Shown here piece by piece: positions 1,062-48,022 of a DNA stretch of 64,000 nucleotides. Location: assembly GCA_963924565.1 (NCBI GenBank), contig OZ004611.1:21018001-21082000 (forward strand). The letters are read 5' to 3'. This DNA is from Ascidiella aspersa (lineage: Eukaryota). The notes under the pieces were generated by a model that did no database searches, had not been told where the DNA came from, and saw only the letters and a list, made by a program, of their open reading frames with translations. Position 1 is the first letter of the stretch; the number at the start of each line of letters is the position of its first letter. A program made the position numbers and the translations under genes.

Positions 1062-1860
1062 TTATTTTAGCCCAAACTTTTCACAAACAACATCTGGCAA
1101 TATGTATTTATTCTCAATTTTTTTTTCGCGCATTAAACCAGCAGCAAAACTCTGTTTCTTGTTAAAGATTTTCACGCTCACTCTGTTACCAGCATCTAGT
1201 GTTTCGTTGACAGAGAGTGTTGTCAAACAAATGTCTTCTTTCATAGAGAAAACGTTGTCTATATGTCCAGCTCGTTGTCGTGGCGCAAAGAATCTGCGAA
1301 ATCAAACAGCATTTATCGCATTTAGGTTATATTTCTGCTTACGCATTATCAAAGATCAAACATATCATGCCTAAACAACCTTTCACCTAACCCCAAAACC
1401 CACCCTGAAGTACATCACTAACTCTCCTAACAGTATTAACCCTAAGCCAATTTCTAACCCCTACCATTGCCCCTAAAATATGCTTGCATTATAAAAGCTA
1501 AGGGAATAATGAAATATTCGAAACGTTTGAAATGATACCTGCTTATATATGGGCTTTGATATTCCAAGTGCTTCCAACTAAAATCTCCAATCGTTATGCT
1601 CCAAAAACTATCAAGCTTGTACTTTGTTTTTTTTTCAAGTTGTTTTAATTGTGAAAGCAACGCGCAACAAAATTAACCGATTTGTTATCAAAAAAAAAAA
1701 CTGTAATCTGTCTTCATTTGTTTAAAATTATGCCGTTTTTCCGGTTATTTGCCGCGAGATCAGACAGGATGGCGAGGAAAGTGGCTTACCTTAAACGCAG
1801 GCCCCGATCGCAAACAACAGATTTAGTCAGATGTTTACACTCCCTGGTGATTTCTGCCAT
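1062..1860 (-). CDS. Putative two-exon gene of unknown function (about 100 aa; MAEITRECKHLTKSVVCDRGLRLR-FFAPRQRAGHIDNVFSMKEDICL...); may be incomplete or a pseudogene
   Basis: ATG at 1860. Exon 1860-1790 ends AG|gtaagc (phase 2). Acceptor tttcgcag at 1293 continues in frame into ORF 1062..1244. No recognisable homology beyond a weak Neuralized/NHR-like spacing. Confidence 0.35.
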
Positions 1861-1885
1861 TGTGTAAAGCGTTCAAAGTCTAGTG

Positions 1886-2201
1886 CAGGTGTTCTTGAAC
1901 TGGGGTCCATGGACCCTTGGGGGTCCGTGAACTAATTTCAGGGGGTCCATGAAGGCCAAATTGAAATATTAGTGTACGTTTGAAAAGTAATCAAATTAAA
2001 AAAAGAGTTTAATTAAAAATGAAACGTTTTACCACTGAATTAGACTCCTTTTTACATAAACCATCAGCATATTTCTGACAGACTATTTGATTGTGACGTC
2101 AATTTATGAGATCATTTTTAACAATTTCTTACCTACAGGGGTCCACGTGAAGCAAAAAATAATTTTAGGGGTCCGCGGTGAAAAAAGTTTAAGAACCCCT
2201 G
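1886..2201. mobile_element. hAT-type MITE
   Basis: Imperfect TIRs CAGGTGTTCTTGAAC / GTTTAAGAACCCCTG; perfect 8-bp TSD GTCTAGTG at 1878-1885 and 2202-2209. Confidence 0.85.
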
Positions 2202-2296
2202 GTCTAGTGCGAAGACTGACGGACGAATTTGAATTTTATTTTTGCGTTTTATTTCATTACATAACATCTAACGAGGCTTAATGGAATTGTTTAATG

Positions 2297-2494
2297 TTAA
2301 GTGGCCAACTCACCCCGGTCTTGGTCATACCAGTTGCCCCATTCGCCATACCAGAGTTCCCGGTCGTCATACCAAGCACGTCTTCTACGAGAAAGCTGTT
2401 TATACTTCTTGTACTTGTTGCCATGATGGCTTCCAGAACCAAGAACGGACGAAACCAGAAATAAAAATACGATGGTCAAAATCAACTTGTTCAT
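2297..2494 (-). CDS. Secreted WYD-motif peptide precursor 1 (signal peptide, basic pro-region ending RRRR, then AWYDDRELWYGEWGNWYDQDR)
   Basis: MNKL + hydrophobic signal. Acceptor ttttcag lies immediately before the ATG. Non-coding exon 1 ends CAAG|gtaagg at 2713; TATAAA at 2769-2764. A phase-1 donor G|gtgagt at 2314/2313 may splice over a 46-nt intron to 2267 (DVM*); otherwise read-through gives GELAT*. Confidence 0.8.
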   Translation of the reverse strand: MNKLILTIVFLFLVSSVLGSGSHHGNKYKKYKQLSRRRRAWYDDRELWYGEWGNWYDQDRGELAT

Positions 2495-2712: not shown

Positions 2713-2826
2713 CTTGGCTTGAGTGAAATAAGGCAACGTGATTACAGCGTACCCTGGAGATTATTTATAGGTTGGACCAGGGCGTTTTACTTATCAACTT
2801 CCTTTAACATTCCAGGAAAATTCCAA
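2713..2826 (-). promoter_or_regulatory. TATA promoter and short non-coding exon 1 of WYD precursor 1
   Basis: TATAAA about 50 bp upstream of the CAAG|gtaag donor. TGATAA (GATA site) and a kappaB-like GGAATTTTCC (2824-2815) lie upstream. Same layout in the two paralogs. Confidence 0.6.
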
Positions 2827-5572
2827 GCGACCGTTTGGCAGTCGGCGCACTCTTTAGCAACAACAGGTTTTGTTTCACTCATATGCTTGGCAAAGTGTCT
2901 TGGAACAAGGAAATATTTTTAACAGACTGCACGTCATTGTCCTGTGGAACGTTTGCTTTTGCCTTCTATAAAACATTGGTAAACGAGTCTTTTCCAGAAA
3001 TCAAAACCCATATCGTTTGTCAAATATTGGGACCGGTCCGCTGTAAGCCATAGTCTGCAACAACTGTTTTTCAGGACCGAAACCCCACTTTGCTTTAGAT
3101 CATACGAAACAATTGGTTCCTAGAGATCATTTTGTTGCAAAAACTATTCACTGCCATCACAGCGAATGTTCTCAACCTTAAAACTTTAACTGAAACTTTA
3201 CAGTACAAGTTTTGAGTTAAGCTTGGCATCGTTACAATCAAAGAAGCAATTATGCAATTACAATTTTCAGTTTTTTTTTCTTTTTATAATAGGCTAATCG
3301 CGAGAAAAATGTGTTAGCTCATGATAGTTGAATGATATCTAAAAATATTTTATAGAACTTTAGAATTGTTTTAGGTCAACATTGTTTTTGTGTTCGGCCT
3401 GCACATAAACGTCTTCCCGTTGTTTTTGGCATAGTTTACACGACTGGAAGTATCGTATAAAGTGCCTGTTTGGTTTCGTTTAAAATAGAGGAACGGTCAG
3501 AAGCACAAACGTTTCGTACAGAGACACTTCCTGGAAATGTTGCGCTTCGACACTCCGGGTACGACAAGTTTTCCTAAGATCGTGGGCGGTTTCGCCAAAA
3601 CGTGTGGAAATCCCTCTTCAACTGTTCTGTTGACGATAACCGGGCGATGAAAATCATCACGAAACTTACGCAATGCAATACTACTCGCCAAAGTTGTGCA
3701 ATCACACACCCTTTGAAGGGAGTTTTCGGGCAGATTTTCAATGTTGCAACGCTCTGTATTGATCTTTTTGTTAAAAACCAACATTCTAAACCAGTACTAC
3801 GCAACCTTTTTTTTTACTGGCGGCACACTATGAGCTAATCGATATTTGGCGGCACCAAATAATTGTAAATCGACGTTACAGATAAGAACCATGCAAGACA
3901 ATCTATAAGTTAAGGAACGTTTTTTGGTTAAATAGGCCTAAGGCACAAAAAATTGGCGTGTTAATGTGTCTTCATATTACAATTTTGCTGTATTTGTCCT
4001 AAAATACCTTATGCCGCTTAAATTCATAAAAAAATACTTTTCTTGCTATAGTCAGAGGACTGTATAAAATCCAAGTACGTCTTGAAGTTAAACCACAGTT
4101 AGTGCATGTAGGCTTGGAAAACTTTTGGCTTCTTTTTATAGTTTAAGTCAAACATTATTCGCCTAACTTAAAACACGTGTGTGTTGTTTTAACATTTATT
4201 TAGCATCTACGATGCATGCTAAACCACGAAGGAAACTAAAAGTGTCTCTTTTAAAAGACAATAGCTTTATATTTCGAGTAGGCTAATGGAACGTACCAAA
4301 TTATTATCAGTAAGCTTTTTGTATCGTGGTTAAGTAAATGGTATTAAACATTCTGTTTTAACCGTTTTCAGAAAATACCGGCATACTTGAGCAAATCGTT
4401 TTATTTTTCAGTACAAAATTAGCATTTTAGTTCAGTTGAGCATTTCTAAACGGAATATATTCATTGGTGTGCTGCTTTGTTGAGTAAATGGTAATTCTAG
4501 CCTAAAAATGAACATCGTCAAGTTTGCAAATTGATTTTATTAACAACTTGTTGGCTAACGGCAACTGTGTGTAACGCAGTTTCGAAATCCCGAGTTTTCA
4601 GTCTGCCTCCGGCAAATTTGCCGATTCTGTCTTGCGACTCCGACTCTATGCCATGCACAACATCCCTTTAGATGTTTAAAATAGGGTGGATGATCTATAT
4701 CAATCCACTGAATGTGGGGTACCATATAACTTATCCGCCAACTATTCGTAGTTGGCAAATTTTTACCACATGCCATTTCACCTATACAATTTACAATTTT
4801 ATCGGTTTCGAATATCGCGGCCTCTTTTGGGTTATTTGGACTTTGGACTCGGGTATCATACGAAATTTTACGCAAGTTTCAAGTCCCTAGTTTGATTGTA
4901 GCAAAATAAACCGACTTTGTCGAGTCCTTAATCCAAACACCGCGGTCCTGCTTACAATAGAAATACTTTGGCTTTTATTGATATTATCATTTTTCGTTTT
5001 TATAACGACAGGTGTACTATCTATAAACTAGCAAAAACATTATTCGTGACGCTTTCAAGAATGAATAGCTTTATATTCTGGGTAATCGATTGTAATGAGT
5101 TGTTATCAATAAGCTGCATGAAAATATATTACTCTTTAAAGATGAAATATGACAGCCCAGGCTATAATTTTACTAATTTTTAACTAAATTTTTATCTTGG
5201 TTAAGTAAATGTAATATTAATATATATTCCTGTTTAAACCATTTAAAAAAAAACTACTGCCATATGGGCCTACTTATAGCACAACGCTTTCTTTTTTAGC
5301 GGTCAGTTTCACATTTAGGCTAACATTCCATTTCGTTTTGAGCATATATATACCGAATATGTAGCTGAATATTTAAGTTCATAGCAATACTGTCCTTCAT
5401 AGAAATGTACAAAAATACACATTGCCAAAAGTTTTGATTTTATTATAATAGCAACAGTTAAAATAAACACATTTCAATTAGTTTCCGAAACCCTGTCAAT
5501 CATCGATGTCATCTTAATATAATCCATAATCCTATTTACAAGAGGTAACGTGTGGCCATCTAGAAAATCAAG

Positions 5573-6309
5573 TTAGGCACCAGCTTCTTCACTGTCCGCC
5601 ATGGGGAAATAAATTTCGTTTTCTGCAAAATAATATTACAAAATATGTCATATCAAGATACTAAATGCCTTTGTCGAATAAAAAGCATTGATATCATGGG
5701 TATATGTTAAATAAAGCATTAATATTATAATTTTTGCTGAAACTATATATTTTCATTCAAAAGAAATTGCAGTGTACTTCACAAAATTCTTTTTAACTAA
5801 GATTATCCATATGTAATGATCCGTTAACCTGATCGTAGCCTCAATACCAGTGTTTTTTAACACAAAACATTTGTTCCCCCTTTACACAAAACAGCAGTTT
5901 TATTACTTTTTCCCTTCATACATGGACAAGAGATAAATTTCTTCATATTATCTGCTTACTAATGGTGCGTTCAAGCTATATTTTCCAAAATGAACAAACG
6001 TTACCCGGCACTGCTAAGAATCTTCAGCATATAGTTTGAGAATCACAGCTCTTTAGGCAAAACACTCACCAACAAACCAACACTAGTGTTTGCTGAAAGT
6101 ACAAATTAATTACCTTCTTGGTCAAACCAAGGCCCCTGTGTAGGTTCTTGGTAATGCCACGGCTTCTGTTTTTGCTGCTGGTAATTCCACGGCCCCTGTT
6201 TAGGGTAATTGTGCCGTGGCCACTGTTTATTCGGATTCTGTTTGCCTTGCACATTTAGGATGGAGATGGTCAACATCAGTAGCACGAGGGTCAAAGAAAG
6301 CTTGTTCAT
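5573..6309 (-). CDS. Secreted Trp/Tyr/Gln/Lys-rich peptide precursor 2 (exons 6309-6114 and 5622-5573; about 81 aa)
   Basis: MNKLSLTLVLL signal peptide; acceptor tttttag directly before the ATG. 10-aa periodic PW motifs (GPWNY, KPWHY, GPWFD). Phase-1 donor G|gtaatt; the in-frame acidic last exon ENEIYFPMADSEEAGA* follows a ttttgcag acceptor. The last-exon assignment is less certain than exon 2. Confidence 0.8.
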
Positions 6310-6570: not shown

Positions 6571-6690
6571 CTTGATGGAAGTGTATAAAACATAGTGATT
6601 AAATGGCGCTCGCACACGATTTATATAGTTGTCAGCTTGGGCGTTTTCTGTTATCATTCCTCCTTACTTTTAAGAAATTTTAAAACAAGC
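6571..6690 (-). promoter_or_regulatory. TATA promoter and non-coding exon 1 of precursor 2
   Basis: CTATATAA at 6628-6621; donor CAAG|gtaagt at 6571; TGATAA; upstream block alignable to that of precursor 3. Confidence 0.6.
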
Positions 6691-8318: not shown

Positions 8319-8863
8319 CCCTAATGGGTTTTCTTTCGTCACCTGTCGCTAATAAAAGCGGTAATTAAAATCACTTTCTGCTCAACTGCTAAAATAAATT
8401 TCTCGCCTTATAAAGTATTCTATCGGTTCGTAAACGCTATTTAGGCTTAACAAGATTGACATCATAAATAAAATCGATTAGATTTTTTTTTAGTTCATAA
8501 ATTCATAAATGGACGAGTAGCCTAATGCAAAGTAATGCATAGGTATTGCAAACTTTCTTTTACTATTGAAAAGTTTTAATTTTCTTATTAAATCCATTCC
8601 ATCATATATTTTCTATTGTTGACCTTGTAATATATTTATGACTAAGCTATAGACTGTTTAGCAACCGTAAAGTTTGGTTTCTGGACATTTCGAGGTTTCT
8701 TGCGTCGTTGGTGTATCCAATAAGCTTACTATTGCAGAGGGTATTTAAATGCTGTATGCTTTGCAAAAAGAAAACAAATATTTTAAACTTCTTTGTTTAT
8801 TATTTATTTGGCAACGCAGTTTCTCAATGATGGCGTGCTCATCGATGTCATCTCTGTGTGATC

Positions 8864-10233
8864 CTACTGGCCTTCATTTTCCTGCAGACCAGCATCTGGA
8901 AAATTAAAAGGGTCAGTCATGTTTTCCTTGTCCAGCATTGGCAAACATTTTAATTTTGGCAAAATGATAGACAAGATGTTGCAACCTGCCAAGTGCGATG
9001 TGAAACTCAAAGTATCAATATTCTAGTCATAAATTTGTTGTTTAAAATATCAATAATGTTTGACAGCCGCATTTGTCTTAGTAAACAACTGAAAAAGCAG
9101 TGGCATTGTAGGCAAAGCCGAGCTTTCGCAGAACCGTTCTTCTTCAGGTCAGAGAAGAATAAAATAAATAATTCTTCCTCCGACCTGAGCACAGTTATGC
9201 GGAAGCTCGTCAACTTCAAAATACGATTTTTCTACAGTGGCTCTTTTTTTACCTCTATTTACAATTATACGGCGAAATCGGATGTCGCTCATAAAATCAT
9301 TATCGGTTGGGTAAGTATATTCGCATTGGACCAAACTCGTAGTACCAAGCGCTAGTCGCCCTACAACACTGGGTCTATATATTGCTAAGGACTCAACAAG
9401 AACTCACCGTGGTCATACCAGCTACCAGCTTTATGATGGTCATACCAGTTTTCAGCTTTTGGCTGGTCATACCAGTTTTCAGCTTTAGGCTGATCATACC
9501 AGCTACCACCTTTGTAATGGTCGTACCAGTTTTCAGCTTTTGGCTGGTCATACCAGTTTTCAGCTTTAGGCTGGTCATACCAGCTACCAGCTTTATGATG
9601 GTCATACCAGTTTTCAGCTTTAGGCTGGTCATACCAGTTTTCAGCTTTAGGCTGGTCATACCAGCTACCAGCTTTATGATGGTCATACCAGTTTTCAGCT
9701 TTAGGCTGATCATACCAGCTACCACCTTTGTAATGGTCATACCAGTTTTCAGCTTTTGGCTGGTCATACCAATTTTCAGCTTTAGGTTGGTCATACCACC
9801 TGCCAGCTTTATGATGGTCATACCAGTTTTCAGCTTTTGGCTGGTCATACCAATTTTCAGCTTTAGGTTGGTCATACCAGCTGCCAGCTTTATGATGGTC
9901 ATACCAGTTTTCAGCTTTAGGCTGGTCATACCAGTTTTCAGCTTTAGGCTGATCATACCAGTTACCACCTTTGTAATGGTCATACCAGTTTTCAGCTTTT
10001 GGCTGGTCATACCAATTTTCAGCTTTAGGTTGGTCATACCAGCTACCAGCTTTATGATGGTCATACCAGTTTTCAGCTTTAGGCTGGTCATACCAGTTTT
10101 CAGCTTTAGGCTGGTCGTACCAGGACTTATCTTCAAGCTGGTCGTACCAAGAACCCCCCTTGGCCTTTCCATGTACATCCAGAATGGAAATGGCCAGAAC
10201 CAACAACACGAGAGTAAACGAAAGCTTGTTCAT
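8864..10233 (-). CDS. Secreted WYD-repeat precursor 3 (exons 10233-9408 and 8895-8864; about 285 aa; 28 nine-residue xxKxxxWYD-type units)
   Basis: Signal peptide MNKLSFTLVLLVLAISILDVHG; acceptor tttttag before the ATG. Units: 17x QPKAENWYD, 6x HHKAG(S/R)WYD, 3x HYKGG(S/N)WYD and 2 divergent N-terminal units. Phase-1 donor G|gtgagt; last exon DAGLQENEGQ* after ttttccag, followed by AATAAA. Confidence 0.9.
9412..10167 (-). repeat. Coding 27-bp tandem repeat (28 units) with 81-bp higher-order periodicity
   Basis: Recurring ggtcataccagttttcagctttaggct and variants; unit order mostly A-A-B. Confidence 0.95.
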
Positions 10234-10579
10234 CTAAAAAAAAATCGTCAAATGACGCTCATTATGTTATGTTCAGGTGCCTCACAGATAGCCAGATTCA
10301 AACCTCAGTAAAAATGAGACAGTGTTTATTAAAAAATAATATATTTAAAAAACTTACTTTATTTGTAACTATAATCTATATTTGTGTCAAAGAGATATAA
10401 TGAAGGAAACCTATCACTACAAAGCATTGTATCTTTTTATTTAAAGTACTGTTTTCTACGATTAAAAAATCGTTAATGCAAAATAGAAAATCATCTATTG
10501 GCCCAGCCATACTTTTGACCAGTTACAAAGTGAAATCAATAAATTAATAAATCTATAATTCGATTTACCTTTCGCTTAC

Positions 10580-10700
10580 CTTGATATAATAAAATACAAC
10601 TATAATGAATACATGGCAATCCAGCGGGACTTATATAGAGTTTTTGCGTGACAATTTTTGTTGTCAATTCCATAAACTTTCAAGAAAATTTCAAACAATA
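10580..10700 (-). promoter_or_regulatory. TATA promoter and non-coding exon 1 of precursor 3
   Basis: CTATATAA at 10638-10631; donor CAAG|gtaagc at 10580; same spacing as in the paralogs. Confidence 0.6.
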
Positions 10701-17804: not shown

Positions 17805-18270
17805 ATATAGATGGATCTATTGTGAAATTTAAGGTCGCCTGGTTCTCAACCAGTATATGACACAATTAAGGCTTTGTAATATCGGTATGATTGGTGTACA
17901 TATTATGTAACATTTGTATCAACATAAAGTAACAAGAAAAAACATTAATCGTAAAACAATCTGTTGCAGACTTTTTTTGGTATCCCTCGTGAGCGTCAAC
18001 TAGGGCGCCGGAAATATTGCCTGTCATGCATAGTGTGCCGCCGGCTATTCAACTGACAACAATGCTGTTAAGTCTCGGAGATATGTTGTAACCATTACGA
18101 GTATTTAAGTGAGTTGTTTTCGTTTAAAGAAAATTTCGTTACACCCTACATTACGCCAACATAGAAAGAATTGAAAGGTAAAATAGCTGTCAATCTTAGT
18201 TGTTACTGTGAACCAATATTCTGCCGTTTTAAAGATTGTTTTCATTGCTGTAGTTATAAAAGTTATAAAC

Positions 18271-21200
18271 ATGGGACTGCTTTCATTTGATGGCGAGCCG
18301 TTAGACTGGGAGGACATAAAGGATCACGTGGACTATGTCAAAAAACATGGAATCACCCAGTTCATTTATAACTTCCAACGTTTGATGCAAAGACCGGAAG
18401 ATATACTGAAATGGGGAGACGAGGTAATTCGTGTAATAGATAGCATTTTGTTACTAACTTGCTGCCACTGTCGCATGACATAATATATTTTGTCAAATGT
18501 TGTTACCTTGGACTCAACCATTTTAACTGTTTGTTTTTTTGTTTGTTTGGCGATACACAAGTCATATAATTTACAATAAAACAGACTTTACAGACAATTT
18601 TTATTTGGGTCATTTTTTATTTCAAAACTGTTATGTTTTCAATAAATAAATCGTTTTTTTTTTATTTTTTCAGGTTGAGTTTATGATCGTTCGATTTGAT
18701 GACATAAATAAAAAAGTGCAGCTATCTTTACACGGAAACCAAGTCTGCGAAATCTTGCAAGAGAGAGAAAAAAAATTAAACAGGTTAGTAATGTTGTGAC
18801 TTGTGGGTCAGCGAAATTTTGAACGATTTTCAACCTTGGACAAACTTTTTCAATAATTTTAAACAAAAATCATGATGTGTGTTTGTAACTATCCGGTTTA
18901 GAAGTTTTATTAGCTGCACAAACCGTTAGCATATTAGTAATTAGTCAACAAAAATAACTAATACGTTTGCCAGATAAACAACTGATTTGTTCTAGACTGC
19001 TATCCTATATTTTTTATATAAACGGGCTTGTATATCCTGTTTTCCCTAATTTGCAACACCGATGTTTTTAATCAAATATAGTTTTACAAACGTTTTAGGC
19101 TTTTCGCAATACATGTGCTTTGGTAGCTAATCGCTTATTAGGTCGTGCTATGAGCGGATTAGGTTGGGACCTTTAAACTATTTGTTTTTACAACTAACTA
19201 TACTGCTCTGAAGTCGCGCAATCGTTGTGTGCCTTCAACGTGTGTTTTTGTGGCCGAATTGAATACCACAACACAAACCTGAAGAACGAATTACTTAAAA
19301 AAAAAATATTAATTGAGATCCCATATCGATTTGCTTTCAACTGCAAAGTTCGGCCATGATAAGCAGCTGGAAGCCAATTTGCAACAAATATCATCAGGCT
19401 ATTCCTGGTATTTCTATTTTTGTCCTTAATATTTAAATTTATATAAGTTAATTGCAATAGAGTACTAATGAGGTTGAGTTTTGCGTTTTACTCATCACAA
19501 ATCGAGTGCCTTATGAAAATGTAAAATCGACACCAAATGACCAAGCGGCGTAACCAAGCCACCGTTTTTATGTTTCTTATTTGACCTAGCGTAAACACAT
19601 TTAACTTTTATAACATTACTCATAAACTCACATAACATTATATTCCAGTACCTGATATTATAATTTATAATAAAGCCTACAGCGAATTAACCTGACACCT
19701 ACGAAGATTTAAGCATCTTAACGGTTAACAGAGAATTATAGCATCAAATAAAGCCTAATTATTATGCGTTTTTTTATTTATTGGACAAACAGTCTATTGG
19801 TAGGCTATGTCCACAAGCGTTGGCTCTATAGTGTTAAAGTGTCTGATTCGTGCTGCCTTAAACTAAAGACCACAAAAGTCTAACTCGAGGGTATTTATTC
19901 CTAGATTGATGTCCCTGTGGCAACCTGAATACGCAAGTTATATGATCGAAGGAACCCCTGGCATACCGTACCTTGGATTTGTATCCCAGTTTACCGAAGT
20001 GGAAGCAAACATGAGACAGAGGTAGTTGGTTGTGCATGTTCAAAGAGACAATTCATGTTATGTGCATTGCCCAGTTCGACCGGTTTTTTGTTATAGGTTA
20101 ACGGTTGTAATTGTTTGTTACGTGCTCTACGTGGTTACGAGGTACAATGCCTTGTTGGCAGTGTTTTTCGCCCGGTCTGTGTAATTGGAAGCCTCTCTTT
20201 CGTAACTTCATTTGACATTTCGGTTACTGTTAAAGGTACTAATCGCTGATTTTGAATGAACTTACCTGACGTAAAGGAAAAGAATAAAATTACTTAACTC
20301 ATTTGACTGAATTCTACGAAACAGAACCTATGGAGTTTAGTAACCGCATTTGTAAGTATAAGTTTAGTATTCGTTTCAAGATATACATGTTTCTTCCGCA
20401 AACTGTCCTTACAACTGTGATCTCTGCTCCGTTCTATTCAATCTTTCAGAAGACAAGCCTATAAATACCCGAATATCATGATTGGTGGGTTAATCTAAAT
20501 GTGTTTACCAGTTGTTTAAAATTTGAGCCGTATATCATTTCGTTTTAGGCGAAAAGAAGTACAAAGTGTGCTGGAGCCGGGCGAACGAATTATGACCATT
20601 TCCGTGTTTCCAAGGTATGACTATATACTTAATCTTATTTAAGGAACAATGTTATACATTTATAAACGTAAGTTAGGGTATTACTAGAATGGTTTAAAAA
20701 TGGCCTTGTTAAAAACATTTTCGTTTTAAAATTCATGTATTCGTTTAACGAAAAGGTATAATTTTAAGGGCGTTACACAACTGTACAAAGTAAAATCTGG
20801 TTTAATCAAAGTGAACTCAAACTGAACCCGAATCAGATTTTTAAGAACCTGTTTTAACCTCATTTTTCTCAAATCGTTACCGAACTTAAACGCTTTTTAT
20901 GAATTTAATTAGACGAACCAGAACTGAACCTGACAAAAAGCTGTACACTCAAATAATACGGCACAACTTATAGGCTACTTAGCTTTGAGTGTCAAATTCT
21001 ATCATGATCGAATTTTGTGCAGTTTGCAAAATATAAAGAATGTTTGTCTATGTGAAAGAGAACAAACTTTTAGTCGTTAACCTAATTGCATATATATTCT
21101 GGTGAAATATTAAATATGTGTTAGACTAAAAAATTTTTCTCAGGGGTAAGTTTAGAAAGAATGAGGGAGGTTTAACCGTCCGGTTAGGCTATTAATAAGA

Positions 21201-24200: not shown

Positions 24201-27200
24201 AAAATGCGTTTAAAGCTCCAGGCTGTTTTTGTTAAACACGAGGCACCTGAAAATCATAAAGCATTTCTGTTAATTGCACCCAGACTTGGCACGAGTGTCG
24301 CAAATTTTTGTTCATCGGCTTAGTACAGTTACAAGCCTTAGAGTGAGCTTTAAAGGCCCCCTGCCAGCAATTCATGAAAAATGTAGAATAGGTTTCATAA
24401 AAGATCACACCGCCTTTGCAAATTAAACCATCAGGGCATCGCATGAAAGTAGTTACTGAAAGTCATTAGAACACAGTTGTTTTAAACTTCAAACAAGTAT
24501 CGCATCACGGTAGCTTGTAAAAAAACTTGCTGCACTTAGTCGGCCTACCAAGTACTTGCACGCAAGCTTATCAGAGAAATAAGTCAAAAAGGGCATTTAC
24601 AGCATGGATTTTCGATGTTATCTAAGCAGCAGCGAAACCCAAGCCAAATGGTAGTTTCGCTATCGATGCGATGCCAAACTGATAAAAGGTATTGTATCAG
24701 TGCTTTTTGATCAAGGGCAACGTTTTATGCGTTAAAAATATTAATTTAGGAAAATAGTGATTGACAAATCGAGAACATTAACCATAAAGAAAATTTGACC
24801 TCAATATTCTGAAAAATGTTATATTTTTACGTTTAATTTTATTGATTTTCCTCTTTTACCTTTTGTGAAAATGACATTTGTATTTTTTCCGAAATGTCTT
24901 GTATCAGGGTCGAAAAATGTAAAAAATATCCAAAATTGTTTACCGGATCAAATTTCTGCAACATTGATTTACAGTTCCGTTTAAGTAATCCCGGAATGTG
25001 ACCTTTGATGCAGTTGCCTGTAAAGACCTGTCCACTCTCTTTGTAGTAATAGCGCAGTAACATGAGCGTGGCAATCGCGTACCAACACTTGTACTCGTAC
25101 AGATGGCGTTAAGTGCTGCTTCGCCCATATTCCGAGGCTATCTGTCAGAGATCGATGTTAGATGGCCGGTAACCGCTGGGAGCGTTGATGATCGAACGCC
25201 AGAGGAACGGGGCTTGGCGCCGGCCAAGAACAATGACCTTGGCTTACACAAGCACAACAGGTACACTTTGAGCTTGTTATAGCCGTAAGGCAGTGCTTCT
25301 CAACCTATCGGTCGCGACCCCAAATTGGGTCGCTGTTTGATTTCGTTGGGTCGCTGACTGCAGCAATTCATATGTTTATACTAATTGAGATTGTTTCTGA
25401 GCAAGATTTCTCAATTAGGAAAATTTAGGAAGCAATACAAATAATGTATAGTTATTAGAATTCAAAATTCTTTATGCTAATGCCTAGTTTTTTTCGCTTA
25501 CAAGAAGCTATTTTTAGTTCGCTTACAAGAAAAACTGTTTGGTCGCCAAACCTTAGACATCATAGCGAAAAAGGGTTGAGAAACACTGCCGTAGGGCGTT
25601 GACCTGTACATTTTACTTAAAAGCTCGTAATGGCATTGTCTCTGTAGCGATGCCGATTTCTTCATACCGGATCGTAGAAATGCGAAGTACCAAACTCGAA
25701 AACTGTAAAATTTATGCCTTATTGCTATTTGTAAAAATAGTATGCTGCATGCTTACAAAAAAAATATGTACCTAATGAACCTGGTAAAAACTGAATCAAA
25801 CATTTATTTTAAAAGATGATTTTGGTAGATTTTTGAATGTTGTGGTTCATTGTTGAATTGTAATTATATCTTTTCTGTTATGGTTTATCTATTTCAGAAA
25901 TGCAATTCGCAAATCGAGGTTTGATTCCCTCGATAGCTACCTTTCAAAAACTTCTGCGGAATTTAACGACATTAATTTTAAAATCGACGAAGACGCAAAG
26001 AAAATGCTGATTGATGCAGGTTTCATTTTAATTCTATCTTGTCTGTAATATTTTACCGAGTTATGCATGCCGAAGAAGTCTCAGTACCAACCAAGAAACG
26101 TACTATACAATTCAACGTAACAAAGCATAGTAGTTGACTTCGTTGACTGATATAAGTTTAAAAGCTTTTCCTAAATGAGTTTAATTTTTAGTCAAGGCCT
26201 AAACTATGTGACTATTAGATAGTTTCTTTAAATGTTGTACATTTTCTTTAAGTGTTTGTACATTTTTTTTTTGACCTGTGTTAATATTTAATGGACTCCT
26301 AAGTTTGTCTGAAGATTTGTATGGCGAAGAAAATAGTTACATTTTGAAGTTAAACTTCTTCAAATATCTAACTCTTGTTTTGTAACTTTTTCAAAGCTTG
26401 ACTTTACGTTTGCAGACTGGATAAACTGACCAAAATTTTAAATATTCTACAAAGACCCATGTTGTATTTCTATCGTTAAATATTACTGACCTTTTTATTA
26501 TTATATTATATATTAGGTATTGTCTTCATCATCTTTTGTTAAGGCATCGACGAACCATTGGCACAACATTTGGGGCATTTGTGGATCCGTGACCCTCTGA
26601 CCTTATTCTCTAAGAAAATTGAATTGGACGATGAAAACGAAACGTATCATTTCGAGGTAGTTAGATAGCTAACTTCTTTGCACGTAGTATTGTTTGTTTC
26701 AATAAATTAAAATTGCATTCTGATTTACCAATTAGTTGCAAATCAAATATGGTGTGTTAAGTTTATCAAACCATGCAAACATCGCCAGTAACAATTTTGA
26801 GACATTGTCCGTTTTAAAGGTTTATGCAAAGGATTCGTGTATAATTTGAGTGATACCTGTTGCAAGTATTTTTTAAGCTTGATCTCCGTAGAGTTAGAAA
26901 TACATTTTAGTTAAAGCAACCGAGACAAGAAGTGGGATTAAACAAACATCACAATTCGATGGGTTTAAAAAGTAATTTGTTTGTATCTACGCAACAACAA
27001 AGCAACGTTTCGCCCGATGATCACATGTTTCGCCCGGTCTATTAACTGTTAAAATATGTACTAGCGGTTTAAGAATCTAACCTTCTCGTTACAGAACATT
27101 CAATCGACCAACTGGCAGTCGCTGCGTTTTAAGCCTCCACCGCCGCGCTCAGACATTGGCTGGCGAATCGAATTCCGCGTCATGGAATCTCAGTTGACCG

Positions 27201-30200
27201 ACTTCGAGAGCGCCGCTTTGGTGGTCTTCGTCGTTCTGTTGACCAGGACCATTCTAACGTTTAAGCTCGACTTTCTCATACCCATGTCGCTGGTAGGAAC
27301 ACCCTTCGTTAACCACCCATATACTTTACGTGGAAGAAGAATAAACACATTTAGCAGTTACAAAATAGTAAAATAGACTTAGGATTAAATTACTGTTTTT
27401 GGAGAAGTGATAAACGGTTGTCCCAGAATCGGATCTGTAATTTTAAGATTTGTTGTTTTTTTCTGAAGCGACGTCACAACACTATAAATAACAACCGGTG
27501 CCAGTTTGAACAAAATCGTCAAAAATACAATACTACAAGTTACTATATAATTTACAACTAAAATTTTGTAACTTTTTATTGGGGACACATTTTTAATGCA
27601 GCTTGCTAAGTTGTATATTGTGTTATAATATGGTCACATTTAGAGACAATAAGTATATTCACACAATGTACTGTCAACTGTTACATAACAGTAGTTGTGG
27701 GAGAAATTGCTTGGTGCATTGAACGAATTGCTTGGTGCACTAAACACGCGGATGCCTAGTGTATGGGAAATTAGTCATTCGATAAAGGACGTGTCGAATA
27801 ACAAAACAGGAAAACACGAGTTCCGAAAAAATTAAGCTAGAGCGTGTATCGCGCGATCGCGTGTGTAGGCAATTGACTGCGTCTAACATAGGCCGCGCAG
27901 TTCGTAGACATACGCCACCCTATTGCAACTAACGACAATGCTTTGAAATAAAACATTTATGTGAGAAAACTGTTGTTATGCAACACAATTAATTAAAATT
28001 CGTTGAAGATATATAATCACAGATAAACATTTATTTTTCCATCTATATTTAAAATTGCATGTAGAATACGTCTGCAAAATTCACAAATGGATGTATAGCA
28101 TATACATATAAACCTTTTTAGTAAGGTCAAGACAATCAGTAATAATTTAAAATTTAATACCAAAATTGGATAAAGCAGTATAATTCGACCAAATAGTCCA
28201 GTAGCACAGCAGAAGCAACCAATGTTTCCCAACAATAAAACAAAAAAGCTATACTTCGTTTAAAATCGTCCACAAAATGCACGTTTCTCAGAAGGCTCGG
28301 CTTGAGAACTTCAACTTCGATGTTTAACCTCAGTATAGTATAGTATAGTATAGTATCATTGGTTGAACGATCGCAAATAACCATCGGCGCCTTTTGTCGT
28401 TGTCTTTAGGTGGAGGAAAACATGAGACGCGCCCAAAAGAACAACGCCGTCAACAGGGAGAAGTTCCACTTTCGCGAGAATGTCTTTGGCGCCACAGAAA
28501 AATCAAGGCAATCGGACCACATGGAAGTGAACGGCGGTGGGTTCACGACCCGATTGCATAGAGTTCTTAGTTTAAAGTCCGACAGTTTGTACTGTTCGAA
28601 ACACGGTTCATCTTCCAGTAGTATTGATCAGTTATTTTCAACCGTATGTATTGTACACCCTAGGGCAGTGGTCGGCAAACTTTTTTTGTCGCTGCCCAAA
28701 GTCTTTTTAGAATTATTAAAGGCCCACCACGTAAAACTACGAAATCAGTGGCGGATTCAGGATATTTGATTTTATGTTGAAGCCTTTATGCCCAAATCAA
28801 CGCCATGCCATAATGTAAAACATAATATAAAGAAGAATATTCGAAAAACATTGCGTTTACATCAAGTTGAGGTTGGCAAAAAAATATATTTTGACAGACT
28901 TTCAGGACACATTTAGCACTTGGGCTTTTCCAAGCTGAACCAATTTTAGAATGATATGCCACACCAACCTTTAAAATAAAGTGCAATGATTGTACGGCTC
29001 TCACGCGGCCCACAACTACATTATAACACTAAGCTATTCAAAACTCCCGGCACACTAAAAATGGCTCTGCGGCCCACATTTGGGCCGCGGCCCACAGTTT
29101 GCCGACCAATGCCCCAGGGTGTACCAGAATTGTTAAAAGGGTGTACCACAATAACGGGGTGTACTGGGGTGTGCAAGATACCTCAAAACAGTAAGCCTAT
29201 GATGAAGTATCACAATAAATAAACAGGTTTATGACCAGACTGAATGGAGTTACAATACATGGCACAACATGTATTTAAGCGTACGAAGCTTTGAAGATAC
29301 TATATTATATTTGTGACATCATAACCAAATATTTCTCTTGATGTATCAGTATTGTGGGGTACTAACTAGTTCTTCATAACGGTTAATAATAGTTTAACTT
29401 TAGCAGGTGTATGACTGTATATCTCCAGTCAAATCTTATTGTTTTGTACGCCCTTATATTTTTCGCATTGAAATCAAAAGCGTTGGTTTCGACGGACTTT
29501 TGAGCTGTGTTTCGTTAAATCTTTGTCAGATAATTTTCTGGTTCGATAGTGCAACCCATTTTTTAAAGAATTGCTTTAGATCACAAAACAAGACGATTGG
29601 TTGCGGAAATATTTGAGTTTAATTTGAAAATCTACGTCAGTTTCGGACTCTTTTACCTACGGCTTATCTGTACAGTTCTTAAAGTCAACCTAAACATTTT
29701 GCTTAATGACATGGATCTAATAATAGGGCAGGCTGTATTTTAAAGTTTCCACATGAAAGAAAACAGCGATGCGTTTGCAGACTATAAGTGTTATATTATA
29801 CGCTTTTAGTAACTCGATGTCGATAGTTGTTGATAGCGTTTGAAATGAAATGCATCATATTTCCTTAGTCCGCTCTAGATATTTAGTAAAGATCTCGGGG
29901 CGGATGGTTGTGGCCAATTTGGCATCATTGCAATTGCATCTCGAAACAATTGGACAATTGGGCATTCTTTAATGTGTTAAAAATGACATCGACCATTTCG
30001 TTAGTTTTTAATCGCAACCTGTTCTTATGCTTTGTTCACAACGTGTCGACACATACTAATACAATGACGTTAACATACTAGGTGCGGACAAAAAACATTG
30101 GATTTTACTATACTTTAGAACAGTGCTTGTTAAACTTTTTGAGTTTTGGTAACCCCTAACATCTTTCTCCAGATTTCATTCACACATGTCTCGTCATATG

Positions 30201-47200: not shown

Positions 47201-48022
47201 TTGGCGACAAAGGCGAAATTTACGACGCGATGCTTCTACTTGTTCTCGCCCTTCGACTCACTTTGGCCATTCAAAAGGCTGAAACGAGATACGGTGAAAT
47301 CGAGAAGTGTTCCGTTGACCTCGTGTATCTCGCCAAAAACCTTGGTCAACCTCTCGTGGTGAACTACCTTCTGCCTTTGGTGGAGGAAATCGGAAATGAT
47401 GTAACGGATGACGTCGAACCCTTCTTCAACTTTACTTTAAGTACTTTGGAGTACTTTTCCGGAGAATACCGGCAAGCTAAAGGTGATTTAAATGGTGCAT
47501 GATGTTTATGAGAGCGCGATGTAATTTAATTTGCAAAATTGCTTAATGCTGTTATGTGTAACCTTTGAAGCCAAGATGTGCATCTCAGCCTTGCTGAAGT
47601 AGGGGTTTCAAGGATTAGGTTGAGAAGTTGCGTGGTAGGTTATGTGTGTATCTGCTTGGCCGCTGAAAACAGTCACGCCTAAACCTGTGTCGTATGAGAT
47701 AGATGAGAACGTTTTTAATCGAGGCTGACTTTTTCGCGTGCATTTTCTAGCTCTGCTCGAGAAAGCGGTTGCTGGCTTGACGCAGCGACACCAGTTAACA
47801 TACAACACCCAAGGCCTTTGCAAGTTCTTTCTTGGCTGTCTGTATATGCGAGACGATACTGACGTCAAGATGTTCGGCAAGGCCATTGCCAGCTTTGAAG
47901 AAGCGAAGCTGGTTTTTGAGAAAAGCAGGAGCACCGTCGACCAAAATCTTTGCTCTCGGGCAATCGAGCAAATAAACATCCGAAAGCAACTGCTGAAATT
48001 AAGTGAAGAGTACATGTTTTAG
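38229..48022 (+). CDS. Pseudokinase (RIPK/TKL-like) + low-complexity linker + TPR-like helical domain protein, paralog A (about 705 aa minimal model)
   Basis: Phase-consistent exons: 38229-38395, 38622-39343, 40234-40338, 41670-41733, 42996-43096, 43804-43846, 45759-45816, 46211-46244, 46524-46604, 47012-47482, 47751-48022 (a further exon is possible at 45033-45084). Kinase motifs LAVK, HKNAVKTLG, HGNIELSNIL, KIAGLS, MRP. Exon phases and motifs mirror paralog B. The kinase and helical exons are solid; the linker exons are less certain. Confidence 0.7.
42281..42579. repeat. About 300-bp palindromic foldback element nested in other repeats
   Basis: ggcgctctttcactattgtacgt..gggttagggtgcgggtt..gagggtgggtcaagt is mirrored by acttgacccaccctc..aacccgcaccctaaccc..acgtacaatagtgaaagagcgcc. 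Confidence 0.85.

What the first reader, a model, noticed from the sequence alone, without database searches (positions are those of the whole stretch)
8864..10233. Multi-core precursor with 28 nine-residue WYD units in an ordered higher-order pattern
Seen: WYD is invariant in all 28 units and Lys occupies the same position in 27. Three unit types (QPKAENWYD x17, HHKAG(S/R)WYD x6, HYKGG(S/N)WYD x3) run A-A-B with one unit missing, and HY units recur every 8-9 units, which implies 27-bp, 81-bp and roughly 243-bp duplication rounds. There are no dibasic sites or amidation glycines between units, so classical neuropeptide processing is unlikely. Inference, two models: (a) a polyprotein cut at Lys or at Tyr-Asp, releasing many ..NWY/..SWY peptides at about 2:1, analogous to multi-core fungal or plant RiPP precursors; (b) an intact adhesive or structural protein like the Tyr/Lys repeats of mussel foot proteins, with His pairs for metal binding and Gln/Lys for transglutaminase cross-linking.
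Basis: partly seen in the sequence, partly recalled or inferred. Interest (0 to 1): 0.82.

Follow-up and report, generated by a model that had tools for sequence, protein, structure and literature searches.

The report
Secreted Trp-Tyr-Asp repeat protein gene
This looks like an intact sea-squirt gene for a secreted, probably unfolded protein made of 28 nine-residue units that all end in Trp-Tyr-Asp; it is a divergent member of a larger, undescribed sea-squirt family, and neither its expression nor its function has been shown.

Summary
On the minus strand, a 22-residue signal peptide is followed by exactly 28 nine-residue units ending in WYD: 17 QPKAENWYD, 6 HHKAG[S/R]WYD, 3 HYKGG[S/N]WYD and 2 odd units. 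They are ordered as three copies of a nine-unit super-repeat, with one unit missing from the middle copy.

The array sits in a clean three-exon gene model. Two small paralogues lie 4 and 8 kb away and share its promoter and exon layout.

The gene is not unique. This probably ascidian genome has at least seven more secreted WYD arrays of 8 to 42 motifs on three chromosomes, and Ciona has one (UniProt H2XTU4). The scan had already met this family on other DNA (note s1-790822).

Those other arrays carry Arg two residues before Trp. This gene has Glu or Gly there, and it also has His-rich units.

Both AlphaFold models are disordered. No canonical cleavage sites separate the units, and no modifying-enzyme genes were seen nearby.

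My best reading is that the protein acts intact as a multivalent aromatic matrix or adhesive protein. A peptide-precursor role is less likely but not excluded.

The family is unpublished as far as I could search. Interest is moderate.

The parts
10631..10637 (-). TATA box (TATATAA) of gene C, inside an upstream block conserved among the three paralogues
   Evidence: Read. The alignment of the three promoter and exon-1 regions has 72% mean column identity, and the TATA box and the exon-1 donor are conserved.
10580..10605 (-). Non-coding exon 1. The 5' end is only estimated, about 30 nt after the TATA box; the 3' end at caag|gtaagc is read from the sequence.
   Evidence: Genes A and B have the same ATCAAG|GTAAG or CAAG|GTAAG donor. 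The transcription start is not determined.
10234..10579 (-). Intron 1 (346 bp), ending in a T-run and ag directly before the ATG
   Evidence: All three paralogues have ...ttttag|ATGAACAAG or ...ttcag|ATGAACAAG.
10168..10233 (-). Start codon and 22-residue signal peptide, MNKLSFTLVLLVLAISILDVHG
   Evidence: It has a basic n-region, a hydrophobic core and V-H-G before the likely cut. AlphaFold places a helix at residues 3-21, the only part with pLDDT above 70. No dedicated signal-peptide predictor was available.
9412..10167 (-). Array of 28 x 27 bp encoding 9-residue units that end in Trp-Tyr-Asp
9408..9411 (-). Last His codon (CAC) and the first base of the split codon; end of exon 2
8896..9407 (-). 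Intron 2 (512 bp, phase 1), with a GTGAGT donor and a ttttccag acceptor
   Evidence: Genes A and B have an intron in the same phase and position.
8864..8895 (-). Exon 3 coding part: it completes an Asp codon, then encodes AGLQENEGQ and the stop
   Evidence: It was translated separately and never joined to exon 2 in any tool call.
8796..8863 (-). 3' UTR, with the motif AGATGACATCGATGA shared with gene B, and two overlapping AATAAA signals at 8808-8803 and 8801-8796
5573..6309 (-). Paralogue B. Exon 2 is 6309..6114 (signal peptide, then degenerate PW[NHF][YD]Q units). Exon 3 is 5622..5573 (...NEIYFPMADSEEAGA, stop).
   Evidence: Its exon 2 matches gene C at E 1.7e-4 in the search of the own genome.
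1259..2494 (-). Paralogue A. Exon 2 is 2494..2314 (signal peptide, a Lys/Tyr/His-rich stretch, RRRR, then AWYDDRELWYGEWGNWYDQDR). Exon 3 is tentatively 1293..1259 (SLRHDNELDI, stop).
   Evidence: Exon 3 of gene A is a best guess from an acceptor in the right phase and is not verified.

Best explanation
Gene C is a real-looking, intact three-exon gene. Its product is a secreted protein of about 31 kDa that is acidic (pI about 5.3) and intrinsically disordered. It carries 28 evenly spaced Trp-Tyr-Asp motifs.

It is a divergent branch of an ascidian family of secreted WYD-repeat proteins. This branch lacks the Arg found before the motif in the other arrays and has His-bearing units. The array grew by 27-, 81- and 243-bp duplications.

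Most likely mechanism (inferred, not shown): the protein works intact as a multivalent 'sticker and spacer' polymer.
- The regularly spaced aromatic pairs, each with a flanking Asp and Lys, would make many weak contacts with each other (condensation), with matrix polysaccharide such as tunic cellulose or glycans, or with other matrix proteins. They could also be substrates for oxidative Tyr cross-linking.
- The 16 His residues bring the net charge from about -17 at seawater pH to about 0 near pH 5.5. The protein could therefore be packed densely in acidic secretory granules and change state on release.

Confidence by layer: about 0.85 that it is a real gene for a secreted, disordered family member; about 0.5 that it acts intact as a matrix or adhesive component; much less for any particular ligand.
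For: **Gene model.** It has a TATA box, a non-coding exon 1, ag|ATG, a strong donor and acceptor, a stop codon and two AATAAA signals. The same layout and a conserved promoter block appear in two neighbouring paralogues.

**Reading frame and selection.**
- Six of the 7 variable sites within unit types are at third codon positions.
- Five of the 7 are synonymous, against 0.148 expected for random changes. The script's conservative test at p = 0.22 gave P = 0.007.
- W, Y and D never change, although their codons vary synonymously.

**Disorder.** AlphaFold gives mean pLDDT 43.6 with no secondary structure beyond the signal helix. The C8 paralogue gives 36.2, and the Atlas model of the Ciona protein gives 0.34.

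**Composition.** W+Y make up 23%. K is 11.5%, D 11.5% and H 6.3%. There is no C, F, I, M, T or V and no N-glycosylation sequon.

**Family.**
- There are seven further arrays with 8-42 motifs and spacings of 8, 9, 10, 12 and 13 residues. Six of them show an N-terminal hydrophobic signal-like stretch in the frames read; the C8 18.996 Mb frame shows none.
- Ciona H2XTU4 has a signal peptide and 7 WYD units, and aligns with gene C from the K-x-K-G-G after the signal peptide onward.
- Variable spacing around an invariant motif argues for a motif-valency function rather than a fixed fold or a fixed peptide product.

**No processing or modification signals.** There are no dibasic or amidation sites. 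The long open frames of the 64-kb window and of 20 kb upstream showed no oxidase, halogenase or protease gene. The only matches were glutamate-cysteine ligase, a kinase fragment and weak arrestin-like frames.

**Context from the literature.**
- Ascidian tunic has phenoloxidase activity, delivered by morula cells and thought to harden the matrix (PMC9395347).
- Halocynthia holdfast adhesive is delivered as condensates of Tyr-derived catechol peptides (PMC13079984).
Against: - No RNA or protein evidence of any kind was obtained.
- No tissue of expression is known, for this gene or for the Ciona relative.
- The protein is acidic, whereas the classical DOPA adhesives are basic.
- Single-sequence AlphaFold is a weak test of disorder for an orphan repeat protein.
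- Paralogue A has a canonical furin-type RRRR site directly before its first WYD. In the other arrays an Arg always sits two residues before Trp. Some processing in the family is therefore plausible.
- Binding to cellulose or glycans, His-driven switching and Tyr cross-linking are inferences from composition alone.
Confidence: 0.5

Rival explanations
1. Multi-core precursor. The protein is cut between units (after Lys, after Asp or Asn, or between Tyr and Asp). This would release many 9-residue or shorter Trp-Tyr peptides, possibly further modified (DOPA, bromo-Trp, sulfo-Tyr, decarboxylation). The products could act as antimicrobial, signalling or metal-binding small molecules, like the tunichrome-, halocyamine- or plicatamide-type compounds of ascidian blood cells.
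For: - The core is perfectly conserved while the flanks vary, and the peptide sequence is under purifying selection.
- Paralogue A has RRRR directly before AWYD.
- Every WYD in the seven other arrays is preceded by R-x, and some by KR.
- Ascidians are known to make small Tyr- and Trp-derived peptides whose genes are unknown (my own knowledge; reviewed in PMC3039461, which I listed but did not read).
- The unit begins with Gln-Pro, as do some plant multi-core peptides (my own knowledge).
Against: - Gene C has a single Arg, no dibasic site and no amidation Gly.
- Its only regular basic residue, Lys, sits 4 residues before Trp, not 2 as in the other arrays. A shared cleavage register is therefore lacking.
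- Most of the Arg sites in the other arrays are monobasic and lack the usual upstream basic residue.
- No modifying enzyme or dedicated protease gene was seen among the long open frames of 84 kb.
- At least eight arrays with 8 to 42 units each look more like matrix genes than hormone precursors.
- No known ascidian natural product corresponds to Trp-Tyr-Asp (my own knowledge; the sequence-string searches found nothing relevant).
Confidence: 0.15
2. Folded OCRE-like module. The units form short beta-strands that stack into a Tyr/Trp-lined sheet, as in the OCRE domain of RBM5. This sheet would bind proline-rich (polyproline II) ligands outside the cell.
For: - UniProt's automatic name for Ciona H2XTU4 is 'OCRE domain-containing protein'.
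- The C8 12.55 Mb and C5 31.917 Mb paralogues score 42 bits against Pfam OCRE, above the 24.7-bit cut-off.
- OCRE is defined by octamer repeats with aromatic clusters followed by Asp, and it binds polyproline helices through exposed tyrosines (PMC5127646).
Against: - Gene C, its two small paralogues and the C4 paralogue have no OCRE match even at E up to 10.
- The 42 bits on the two paralogues are the sum of 5-7 partial stretches. A six-frame OCRE search of the genome reports only one locus, on C2, and none of the arrays.
- AlphaFold predicts no strands and very low confidence for gene C and for the OCRE-scoring paralogue.
- Unit lengths of 9, 10, 12 and 13 residues do not fit an octamer fold.
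- OCRE is an intracellular domain of five repeats, whereas these proteins have signal peptides and up to 42 units.
Confidence: 0.07
3. Not a functional gene. The array is an expanded coding-like minisatellite in a silent or decaying gene, or its copy number is an assembly artefact.
For: - No expression evidence was obtained.
- None of nine family open frames is in the 15-billion-protein collection.
- Two other frames across the repeat are also open.
Against: - The frame is intact over 275 codons.
- Start codon, signal peptide, splice sites, stop codon and polyA signals are all correctly placed.
- Variation is biased to synonymous third positions in this frame only.
- The promoter and exon structure are conserved across three paralogues.
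- A gene-model protein with the same design exists in Ciona.
- The window has no N, and the units carry distinct synonymous markers in an orderly pattern.
Confidence: 0.08

Closest known systems
Ciona intestinalis H2XTU4 (UniRef100_H2XTU4), an uncharacterised 126-residue protein auto-named 'OCRE domain-containing protein'
   Same: - A hydrophobic N-terminal stretch that reads as a signal peptide, then K-K-G-G (gene C has K-A-K-G-G), then tandem units ending in WYD.
- Lys and Gly at -4 and -3 from Trp, as in the HYKGGSWYD units.
- A polar, acidic tail.
- BLASTP E 3e-10.
- It was the only convincing relative among 1.84 billion representatives.
   Different: - Only 7 units, alternating between 8 and 9 residues.
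- His or Arg at -2 from Trp.
- A longer C-terminal part containing Cys.
- Nothing is published on it.
The R-x-W-Y-D arrays of this same genome (C4 0.242 Mb; C5 31.917 and 31.922 Mb; C8 12.55, 18.996, 19.008 and 19.021 Mb), already noted by this scan as s1-790822
   Same: - An N-terminal signal-like stretch in six of the seven frames read.
- Long tandem arrays with an invariant W-Y-D (or W-Y-N).
- Acidic, predicted disordered, with higher-order repeats.
- Confined to ascidians as far as could be searched.
   Different: - They always have Arg at -2 from Trp; gene C has Glu or Gly.
- Their units are 8, 10, 12 or 13 residues rather than 9.
- They use TGGTACGAT rather than TGGTATGAC.
- The four read upstream show an ATG with no acceptor directly before it, and the five whose 3' ends were read run straight to a stop. 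They lack the 5' non-coding exon and the short last exon of genes A, B and C.
- Identity to gene C is limited to W, Y and D.
Mussel foot protein 1 and plant proline-rich or extensin-type wall proteins (short Tyr/Lys/Pro tandem repeats, cross-linked after secretion)
   Same: - Secreted and disordered.
- Dozens of short tandem units, each with Tyr and Lys.
- Pro in the commonest unit.
- Higher-order repeat structure.
- The resemblance is one of working principle only (my own knowledge of these families).
   Different: - No sequence relationship.
- Gene C is acidic (pI 5.3) and Trp-rich, with Asp in every unit, whereas mussel foot protein 1 is strongly basic with hydroxylated Pro and DOPA.
- No evidence of DOPA or cross-links here.
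OCRE domain (Pfam PF17780; RBM5, RBM10)
   Same: Short periodic units with adjacent aromatic residues followed by Asp. Two paralogues pass the Pfam threshold.
   Different: Gene C does not match. It is secreted, has 28 nine-residue units instead of five octamers, and is not predicted to form a beta-sheet. The Pfam score on the paralogues comes from summed partial matches.
Multi-core peptide precursors (fungal dikaritins such as ustiloxin, plant lyciumins, animal FMRFamide-type polyproteins)
   Same: A signal peptide followed by many copies of a short conserved core. The unit starts with Gln-Pro and has Trp near its end, as in lyciumin cores (my own knowledge).
   Different: No Kex2- or furin-type dibasic sites between cores. 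No BURP, DUF3328 or other maturase domain in the protein or among the long open frames nearby. No amidation signal.

Membership tests
Ascidian secreted WYD-repeat family (unnamed; Ciona H2XTU4 plus at least 7 other arrays in this genome) | N-terminal signal peptide | tested here: met
   MNKLSFTLVLLVLAISILDVHG has a basic n-region, a hydrophobic core and small residues at -3 and -1. It forms the only confident helix in the model. This was judged by inspection; no SignalP was available.
Ascidian secreted WYD-repeat family (unnamed; Ciona H2XTU4 plus at least 7 other arrays in this genome) | Tandem array with an invariant Trp-Tyr-Asp at the end of every unit | tested here: met
   28 of 28 units.
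Ascidian secreted WYD-repeat family (unnamed; Ciona H2XTU4 plus at least 7 other arrays in this genome) | Basic residue (Arg, or His in Ciona) two residues before Trp | tested here: not met
   Gene C has E (17), G (10) or K (1) at -2. The other seven arrays have R at -2 before nearly every motif: all in six arrays, and 35 of 37 in the C4 array, where two have K. Ciona has H or R. Paralogue A meets the feature at its first motif (RRRR-A-WYD).
Ascidian secreted WYD-repeat family (unnamed; Ciona H2XTU4 plus at least 7 other arrays in this genome) | Sequence similarity beyond the motif itself | tested here: inconclusive
   BLASTP E is 4e-15 to the C8 paralogue, but the identities are almost only W, Y and D. 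Against Ciona H2XTU4, E is 3e-10, with extra matches after the signal peptide and at Lys and Gly at -4 and -3. Common descent and convergence on the motif cannot be told apart for repeats this short.
Ascidian secreted WYD-repeat family (unnamed; Ciona H2XTU4 plus at least 7 other arrays in this genome) | Predicted lack of a stable fold | tested here: met
   pLDDT is 43.6 for gene C and 36.2 for the C8 paralogue. The Atlas model of Ciona H2XTU4 has 0.34.
OCRE domain (PF17780) | Match to the Pfam model above its gathering score | tested here: not met
   Gene C has no OCRE match at E up to 10. Two paralogues score 42 bits as sums of 5-7 partial stretches. The six-frame genome search finds only a C2 locus.
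OCRE domain (PF17780) | About five octamer repeats with aromatic triplets, folding into a small twisted antiparallel beta-sheet (PMC5127646) | tested here: not met
   Gene C has 28 nonamers with aromatic doublets, and no strands were predicted.
Mussel-foot-protein-like DOPA adhesives | Short tandem repeats rich in Tyr and Lys in a secreted, disordered protein | tested here: met
   Y is 12.3% and K 11.5%, in 28 tandem units, and the protein is predicted disordered.
Mussel-foot-protein-like DOPA adhesives | Strongly basic protein | tested here: not met
   pI is 5.3, and net charge is about -17 at pH 8.1.
Mussel-foot-protein-like DOPA adhesives | Tyr converted to DOPA; made in an adhesive gland | not testable with these tools
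   This needs chemistry and expression data.
Multi-core ribosomal peptide or neuropeptide precursors | Recognised cleavage signals (dibasic KR/RR, or monobasic with an upstream basic residue) flanking each core | tested here: not met
   There are none between the units of gene C, and the mature part has one Arg. The RRRR site is in paralogue A only.
Multi-core ribosomal peptide or neuropeptide precursors | Maturase or modifying enzyme fused to the precursor or encoded beside it | tested here: not met
   The protein has no Pfam domain. Among the long open frames of the window and 20 kb upstream, the only matches were glutamate-cysteine ligase, a kinase fragment and weak arrestin-like frames. 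Animal genes need not be clustered, so this is weak evidence.
Multi-core ribosomal peptide or neuropeptide precursors | Released peptides detected | not testable with these tools
   This needs peptidomics.

The most novel reading that the evidence does not exclude
The WYD genes, including this 28-unit one, may be ribosomal multi-core precursors from which ascidian cells cut and chemically modify Trp-Tyr peptides (hydroxylation, halogenation, decarboxylation). That would make them the missing genes behind the small aromatic peptide metabolites of sea-squirt blood cells, and an animal counterpart of fungal and plant multi-core modified peptides.
Probability: 0.08. Interest if true: 0.88.

Novelty: new variant of a known kind. 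Interest (0 to 1): 0.45.

Why it matters
Sea squirts are the closest invertebrate relatives of vertebrates and the only animals that build a cellulose coat. They are also a model for underwater adhesion and for unusual aromatic peptide chemistry.

A lineage-restricted family of secreted proteins with more than 200 copies of one Trp-Tyr-Asp motif is a concrete, testable candidate component of that matrix, adhesive or blood-cell chemistry. It has no published description that I could find.

This gene is the family's odd member: it lacks the Arg, has His switches and sits beside two mini-paralogues. Comparing it with the Arg-bearing arrays could show which part of the motif does the work. If it turns out to be an ordinary structural repeat protein, the value is mainly in annotation.

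Tried and rejected
**Searches that found nothing useful**
- Pfam on gene C and on paralogues A and B: only sub-threshold noise.
- Word-index protein search with gene C, with paralogue A and with the Ciona protein: no relatives beyond the Ciona entry itself.
- Full HMMER search of 1.84 billion representatives: 134 hits. All those I inspected except Ciona H2XTU4 were unrelated periodic repeats or spurious frames. P0021, a 615-residue protein with SDSWYD units and no source name, looks like an unrelated repeat protein, and I set it aside.
- ESM Atlas: nothing.
- PDB sequence search: only chance matches.
- Literature searches for the unit strings, for OCRE with ascidian and for H2XTU4: nothing relevant. 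The Ciona tunic proteomics supplements do not contain H2XTU4.
- Exact look-up of nine family open frames in the 15-billion collection: none present.

- As a result there is no RNA evidence and no long-read check of the array.

**Hits and ideas set aside**
- The C1 36.97 Mb hit to gene C is an unrelated SDR[LP]KS[SN]YL nine-residue repeat frame.
- I considered an OCRE-like fold and rejected it for this gene.
- I also considered Tyr sulfation, C-mannosylation of Trp, calcium binding, and a commensurate fit of the 9-residue period to the cellulose repeat. None can be tested here, so none is claimed.

**Handling of the spliced model.** I never joined the exons. Exon 2 was searched by reference, and exon 3 was only translated on its own.
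Full report
**1. Observation**

- **The array.** The minus strand of window 9385-10233 holds a 282-codon open frame. From the ATG at 10233 it reads MNKLSFTLVLLVLAISILDVHG, followed by 28 consecutive nine-residue units that all end in Trp-Tyr-Asp.
- **Unit types.** There are 17 QPKAENWYD, 5 HHKAGSWYD, 1 HHKAGRWYD, 2 HYKGGSWYD and 1 HYKGGNWYD. The two N-terminal units are KAKGGSWYD and QLEDKSWYD.
- **Order.** The order is xxAAB-AAC-AAB | AAB-AAC-AB | AAB-AAC-AAB. This is three copies of a nine-unit super-repeat made of three-unit blocks, with one A unit missing from the middle copy. DNA self-identity is highest at lag 81 (0.886), and the 243-bp super-repeat is read from the unit order.
- **Not chance.** Tandem Repeats Finder gives period 27, 26.4 copies, score 938. 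The motif counts are far above shuffled expectation.

**2. Gene model**

The sequence is eukaryotic in style (36% G+C, introns). Earlier notes of this scan call the genome a probable ascidian, and the only outside relative I found is from Ciona.

| Feature | Position |
|---|---|
| TATATAA box | 10637-10631 |
| Short non-coding exon, ending caag\|gtaagc | ends at 10580 |
| Intron 1 (346 bp), ending ...tttttag directly before the ATG | 10579-10234 |
| Exon 2 | 10233-9408 |
| G\|GTGAGT donor in phase 1 | after 9408 |
| Intron 2 (512 bp) with a ttttccag acceptor | 9407-8896 |
| Last coding piece: completes Asp, then AGLQENEGQ and stop | 8895-8864 |
| Two AATAAA signals | about 60 bp further on |

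If intron 2 were retained, the frame would end after seven more codons, so the array is unaffected either way.

Exon 2 was always given by reference, and exon 3 was translated on its own.

Two other frames across the repeat are open. Only the WYD frame has a start codon, a signal peptide and splice sites in place, and only in this frame does the variation fall at third codon positions.

**3. Selection**

- Within unit types there are seven variable nucleotide sites. Six are third positions and five are synonymous.
- Random single-base changes in these units would be synonymous 14.8% of the time. Even at an assumed 22%, the chance of five or more synonymous sites out of seven is 0.007.
- The W, Y and D codons vary synonymously (TAT/TAC, GAC/GAT) but never change the residue.
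- The peptide sequence, and above all the motif, is therefore being kept.

**4. Local paralogues**

Two small genes lie on the same strand with the same layout.

- **Gene B.** Exon 2 is 6309-6114 and exon 3 is 5622-5573. It encodes a signal peptide followed by degenerate PW[NHF][YD]Q units.
- **Gene A.** Exon 2 is 2494-2314 and exon 3 is tentatively 1293-1259. It encodes a signal peptide, a Lys/Tyr/His-rich stretch, RRRR, and then AWYDDRELWYGEWGNWYDQDR.
- **Shared regulation.** The three promoter and exon-1 regions align at 72% mean column identity, including the TATA box and the donor site. B and C also share a 3'-UTR motif. Shared regulatory sequence suggests expression in the same cells. 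This is an inference.

**5. The wider family**

- **How it was found.** Searching the genome with gene C returned only its own locus, gene B and an unrelated repeat frame. The full HMMER search of 1.84 billion representatives gave 134 periodic look-alikes. Only one was convincing: UniRef100_H2XTU4 of Ciona intestinalis. It has 126 residues, a signal peptide, and seven units of NSEPHSWYD or AKG[RH]EWYD.
- **Other arrays in this genome.** Using that protein as a probe on this genome, followed by a degenerate DNA pattern, uncovered seven further arrays:
  - C4 0.242 Mb, 37 motifs
  - C5 31.917 Mb, 40 motifs
  - C5 31.922 Mb, 18 motifs
  - C8 12.55 Mb, 41 motifs
  - C8 18.996 Mb, 8 motifs
  - C8 19.008 Mb, 8 motifs
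  - C8 19.021 Mb, 42 motifs
An earlier agent of this scan had reached the same family view from the 42-unit gene (s1-790822). I saw that note only after my own census.
- **How the others differ.** Their units are 8, 10, 12 or 13 residues long, and an Arg sits two residues before nearly every Trp (R-x-W-Y-D/N). Gene C has Glu or Gly there, and Ciona has His or Arg. They use TGGTACGAT where gene C uses TGGTATGAC. Where I read their ends, the ATG has no acceptor directly before it and the frame runs straight to a stop, unlike the three-exon A/B/C layout.
- **Where gene C fits.** Its similarity to the other arrays is essentially confined to W, Y and D. Its similarity to the Ciona protein also includes the K-x-K-G-G after the signal peptide and the Lys and Gly at -4 and -3. 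Gene A's RRRR-A-WYD fits the R-x-W-Y-D pattern. I therefore treat the window cluster as a divergent branch of one family. Convergence on the motif cannot be excluded for such short repeats.

**6. Fold**

- AlphaFold (single sequence) gives mean pLDDT 43.6 for gene C, with no secondary structure after the signal helix.
- It gives 36.2 for the C8 12.55 Mb paralogue.
- The Atlas model of the Ciona protein has pLDDT 0.34.

Ciona H2XTU4 carries UniProt's automatic name 'OCRE domain-containing protein'. Two paralogues score 42 bits on Pfam OCRE, but only as the sum of five to seven partial stretches. A six-frame OCRE search of the genome reports just one locus, on C2, and none of the arrays. Gene C, A, B and the C4 paralogue do not match at all.

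OCRE is an intracellular module of five octamers that folds into a small beta-sheet (PMC5127646). I read the Pfam score as an effect of periodicity, not as membership.

**7. Properties that bear on mechanism**

- **Composition.** The mature exon-2 part has 253 residues and a mass of 31 kDa. It is 12.3% Tyr, 11.1% Trp, 11.5% Lys, 11.5% Asp and 6.3% His. It has no Cys, Phe, Ile, Met, Thr or Val and no N-glycosylation sequon.
- **Charge.** The computed net charge is about -17 at pH 8.1 and about 0 at pH 5.5. The shift comes from the 16 His residues in the B and C units.
- **Spacing.** Evenly spaced aromatic residues in a disordered chain favour reversible condensation, an established principle of sticker-and-spacer polymers that I cite from my own knowledge.
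- **Sugar contacts.** Trp, Tyr, Asp and Arg are also the residues most enriched at protein-carbohydrate contacts (again my own knowledge).
- **Ascidian context.** Tunic has phenoloxidase activity supplied by morula cells and thought to harden the matrix (PMC9395347). The Halocynthia holdfast adhesive is delivered as condensates of catechol-rich peptides of 1.5-2 kDa (PMC13079984). The reported composition of those peptides (about half DOPA, plus Glx, Ser and Gly) does not match this protein.

**8. Neighbourhood**

The long open frames I examined showed no oxidase, halogenase, protease or other candidate maturase. I looked at frames of at least 65 residues in the window, of which ten were scanned against Pfam, and at the longest frames of at least 95 residues in the 20 kb upstream, of which four were scanned.

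- On the right lies a glutamate-cysteine ligase gene on the plus strand; its exons match Pfam GCS at 27.1 and 32.0 kb.
- Further right is a kinase-like fragment at 38.5 kb.
- Upstream are weak arrestin-like frames in two copies.

**9. Interpretation**

- **Shown.** An intact-looking, selected gene model for a protein with a signal peptide and 28 WYD motifs, no predicted fold and no canonical processing sites. It belongs to, or at least resembles, an ascidian family of such proteins.
- **Inferred.** It acts intact as a multivalent aromatic matrix or adhesive polymer. It may be switched by pH through His, and it may bind polysaccharide or become cross-linked. I put this at about 0.5.
- **Rivals.** Peptide precursor, about 0.15, kept alive by the RRRR of gene A and the R-x register of the other arrays. 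OCRE-like folded binder, about 0.07. Silent gene or artefact, about 0.08. The remainder is something not thought of.

**10. Limits**

- No RNA, read-level or proteomic evidence could be obtained.
- Cross-species evidence rests on a single Ciona database entry.
- The signal peptide was judged by eye.
- Exon 3 of gene A and the transcription start sites are guesses.

**11. Novelty and score**

No paper in the searchable library mentions the unit strings, H2XTU4, or OCRE in ascidians. The family therefore appears undescribed, although it is not new to this scan.

As a kind of object, a secreted disordered tandem-repeat protein rich in Tyr and Lys, it is a new variant of something well known. Interest is moderate (0.45). 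It would rise sharply if the units prove to be cut and modified.

Noticed in passing
window 12000-32200, plus strand: A multi-exon glutamate-cysteine ligase catalytic-subunit gene lies next to the WYD cluster. Exons at 27065-27373 and 31974-32183 match Pfam GCS (E 1e-32 and 2e-14). A frame at 18187-18480 looks like another of its exons, but it gave no Pfam match.
   Followed up: partly
window 38488-39399, plus strand: A 304-codon open frame has a partial protein-kinase match covering Pfam positions 51-149 of 258 only. It may be a fragment or a pseudogene.
   Followed up: no
window 46915-47499 (+) and 56388-56945 (-): Two open frames in opposite orientation, about 9 kb apart, encode 41%-identical proteins (BLASTP E 2e-40). 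Neither has a Pfam domain. They may be an inverted pair of an unknown gene or element.
   Followed up: partly
L002 952-2157 (G000 C1, about 36.97 Mb), plus strand: An unrelated 401-codon open frame consists of about 44 nine-residue units, SDR[LP]KS[SN]YL. It surfaced only because it has the same 9-residue period, and I did not assess whether it is a gene.
   Followed up: no
window 10660-10690, 6650-6680 and 2800-2830, minus strand: About 40-60 bp upstream of the TATA box, all three paralogues keep a T-rich block: TTTGAAATTTTCTTGAAA in C, TTTTAAAATTTCTTAAAA in B and TTGGAATTTTCCTGGAAT in A. The gene A version contains TTCCTGGAA, which reads like a STAT-type palindrome. This may be a shared enhancer element.
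   Followed up: no
window 10581-10612 and 6572-6600, minus strand: The presumed non-coding first exons of genes C and B each contain a short upstream ATG frame. In C it is MYSL followed by a stop. In B it would run across the splice junction and end in a TGA that overlaps the main ATG. The transcription start sites are unknown, so this is uncertain.
   Followed up: no
L026 and L031 (G000 C5 20998001-21018000): Nearly identical arrestin-like frames occur twice, about 8 kb apart, just upstream of the window. Both Pfam matches are weak and below cut-off: Arrestin_N E 0.008 on the L031 copy and Arrestin_C E 0.004 on the L026 copy. This suggests a recent tandem duplication.
   Followed up: partly
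G000 C8 18996541-19022127: Three WYD genes with 13-residue units lie within 26 kb: two short ones with 8 motifs each and one with 42. This is a second tandem cluster of the family, in addition to the C5 31.917 and 31.922 Mb pair.
   Followed up: partly
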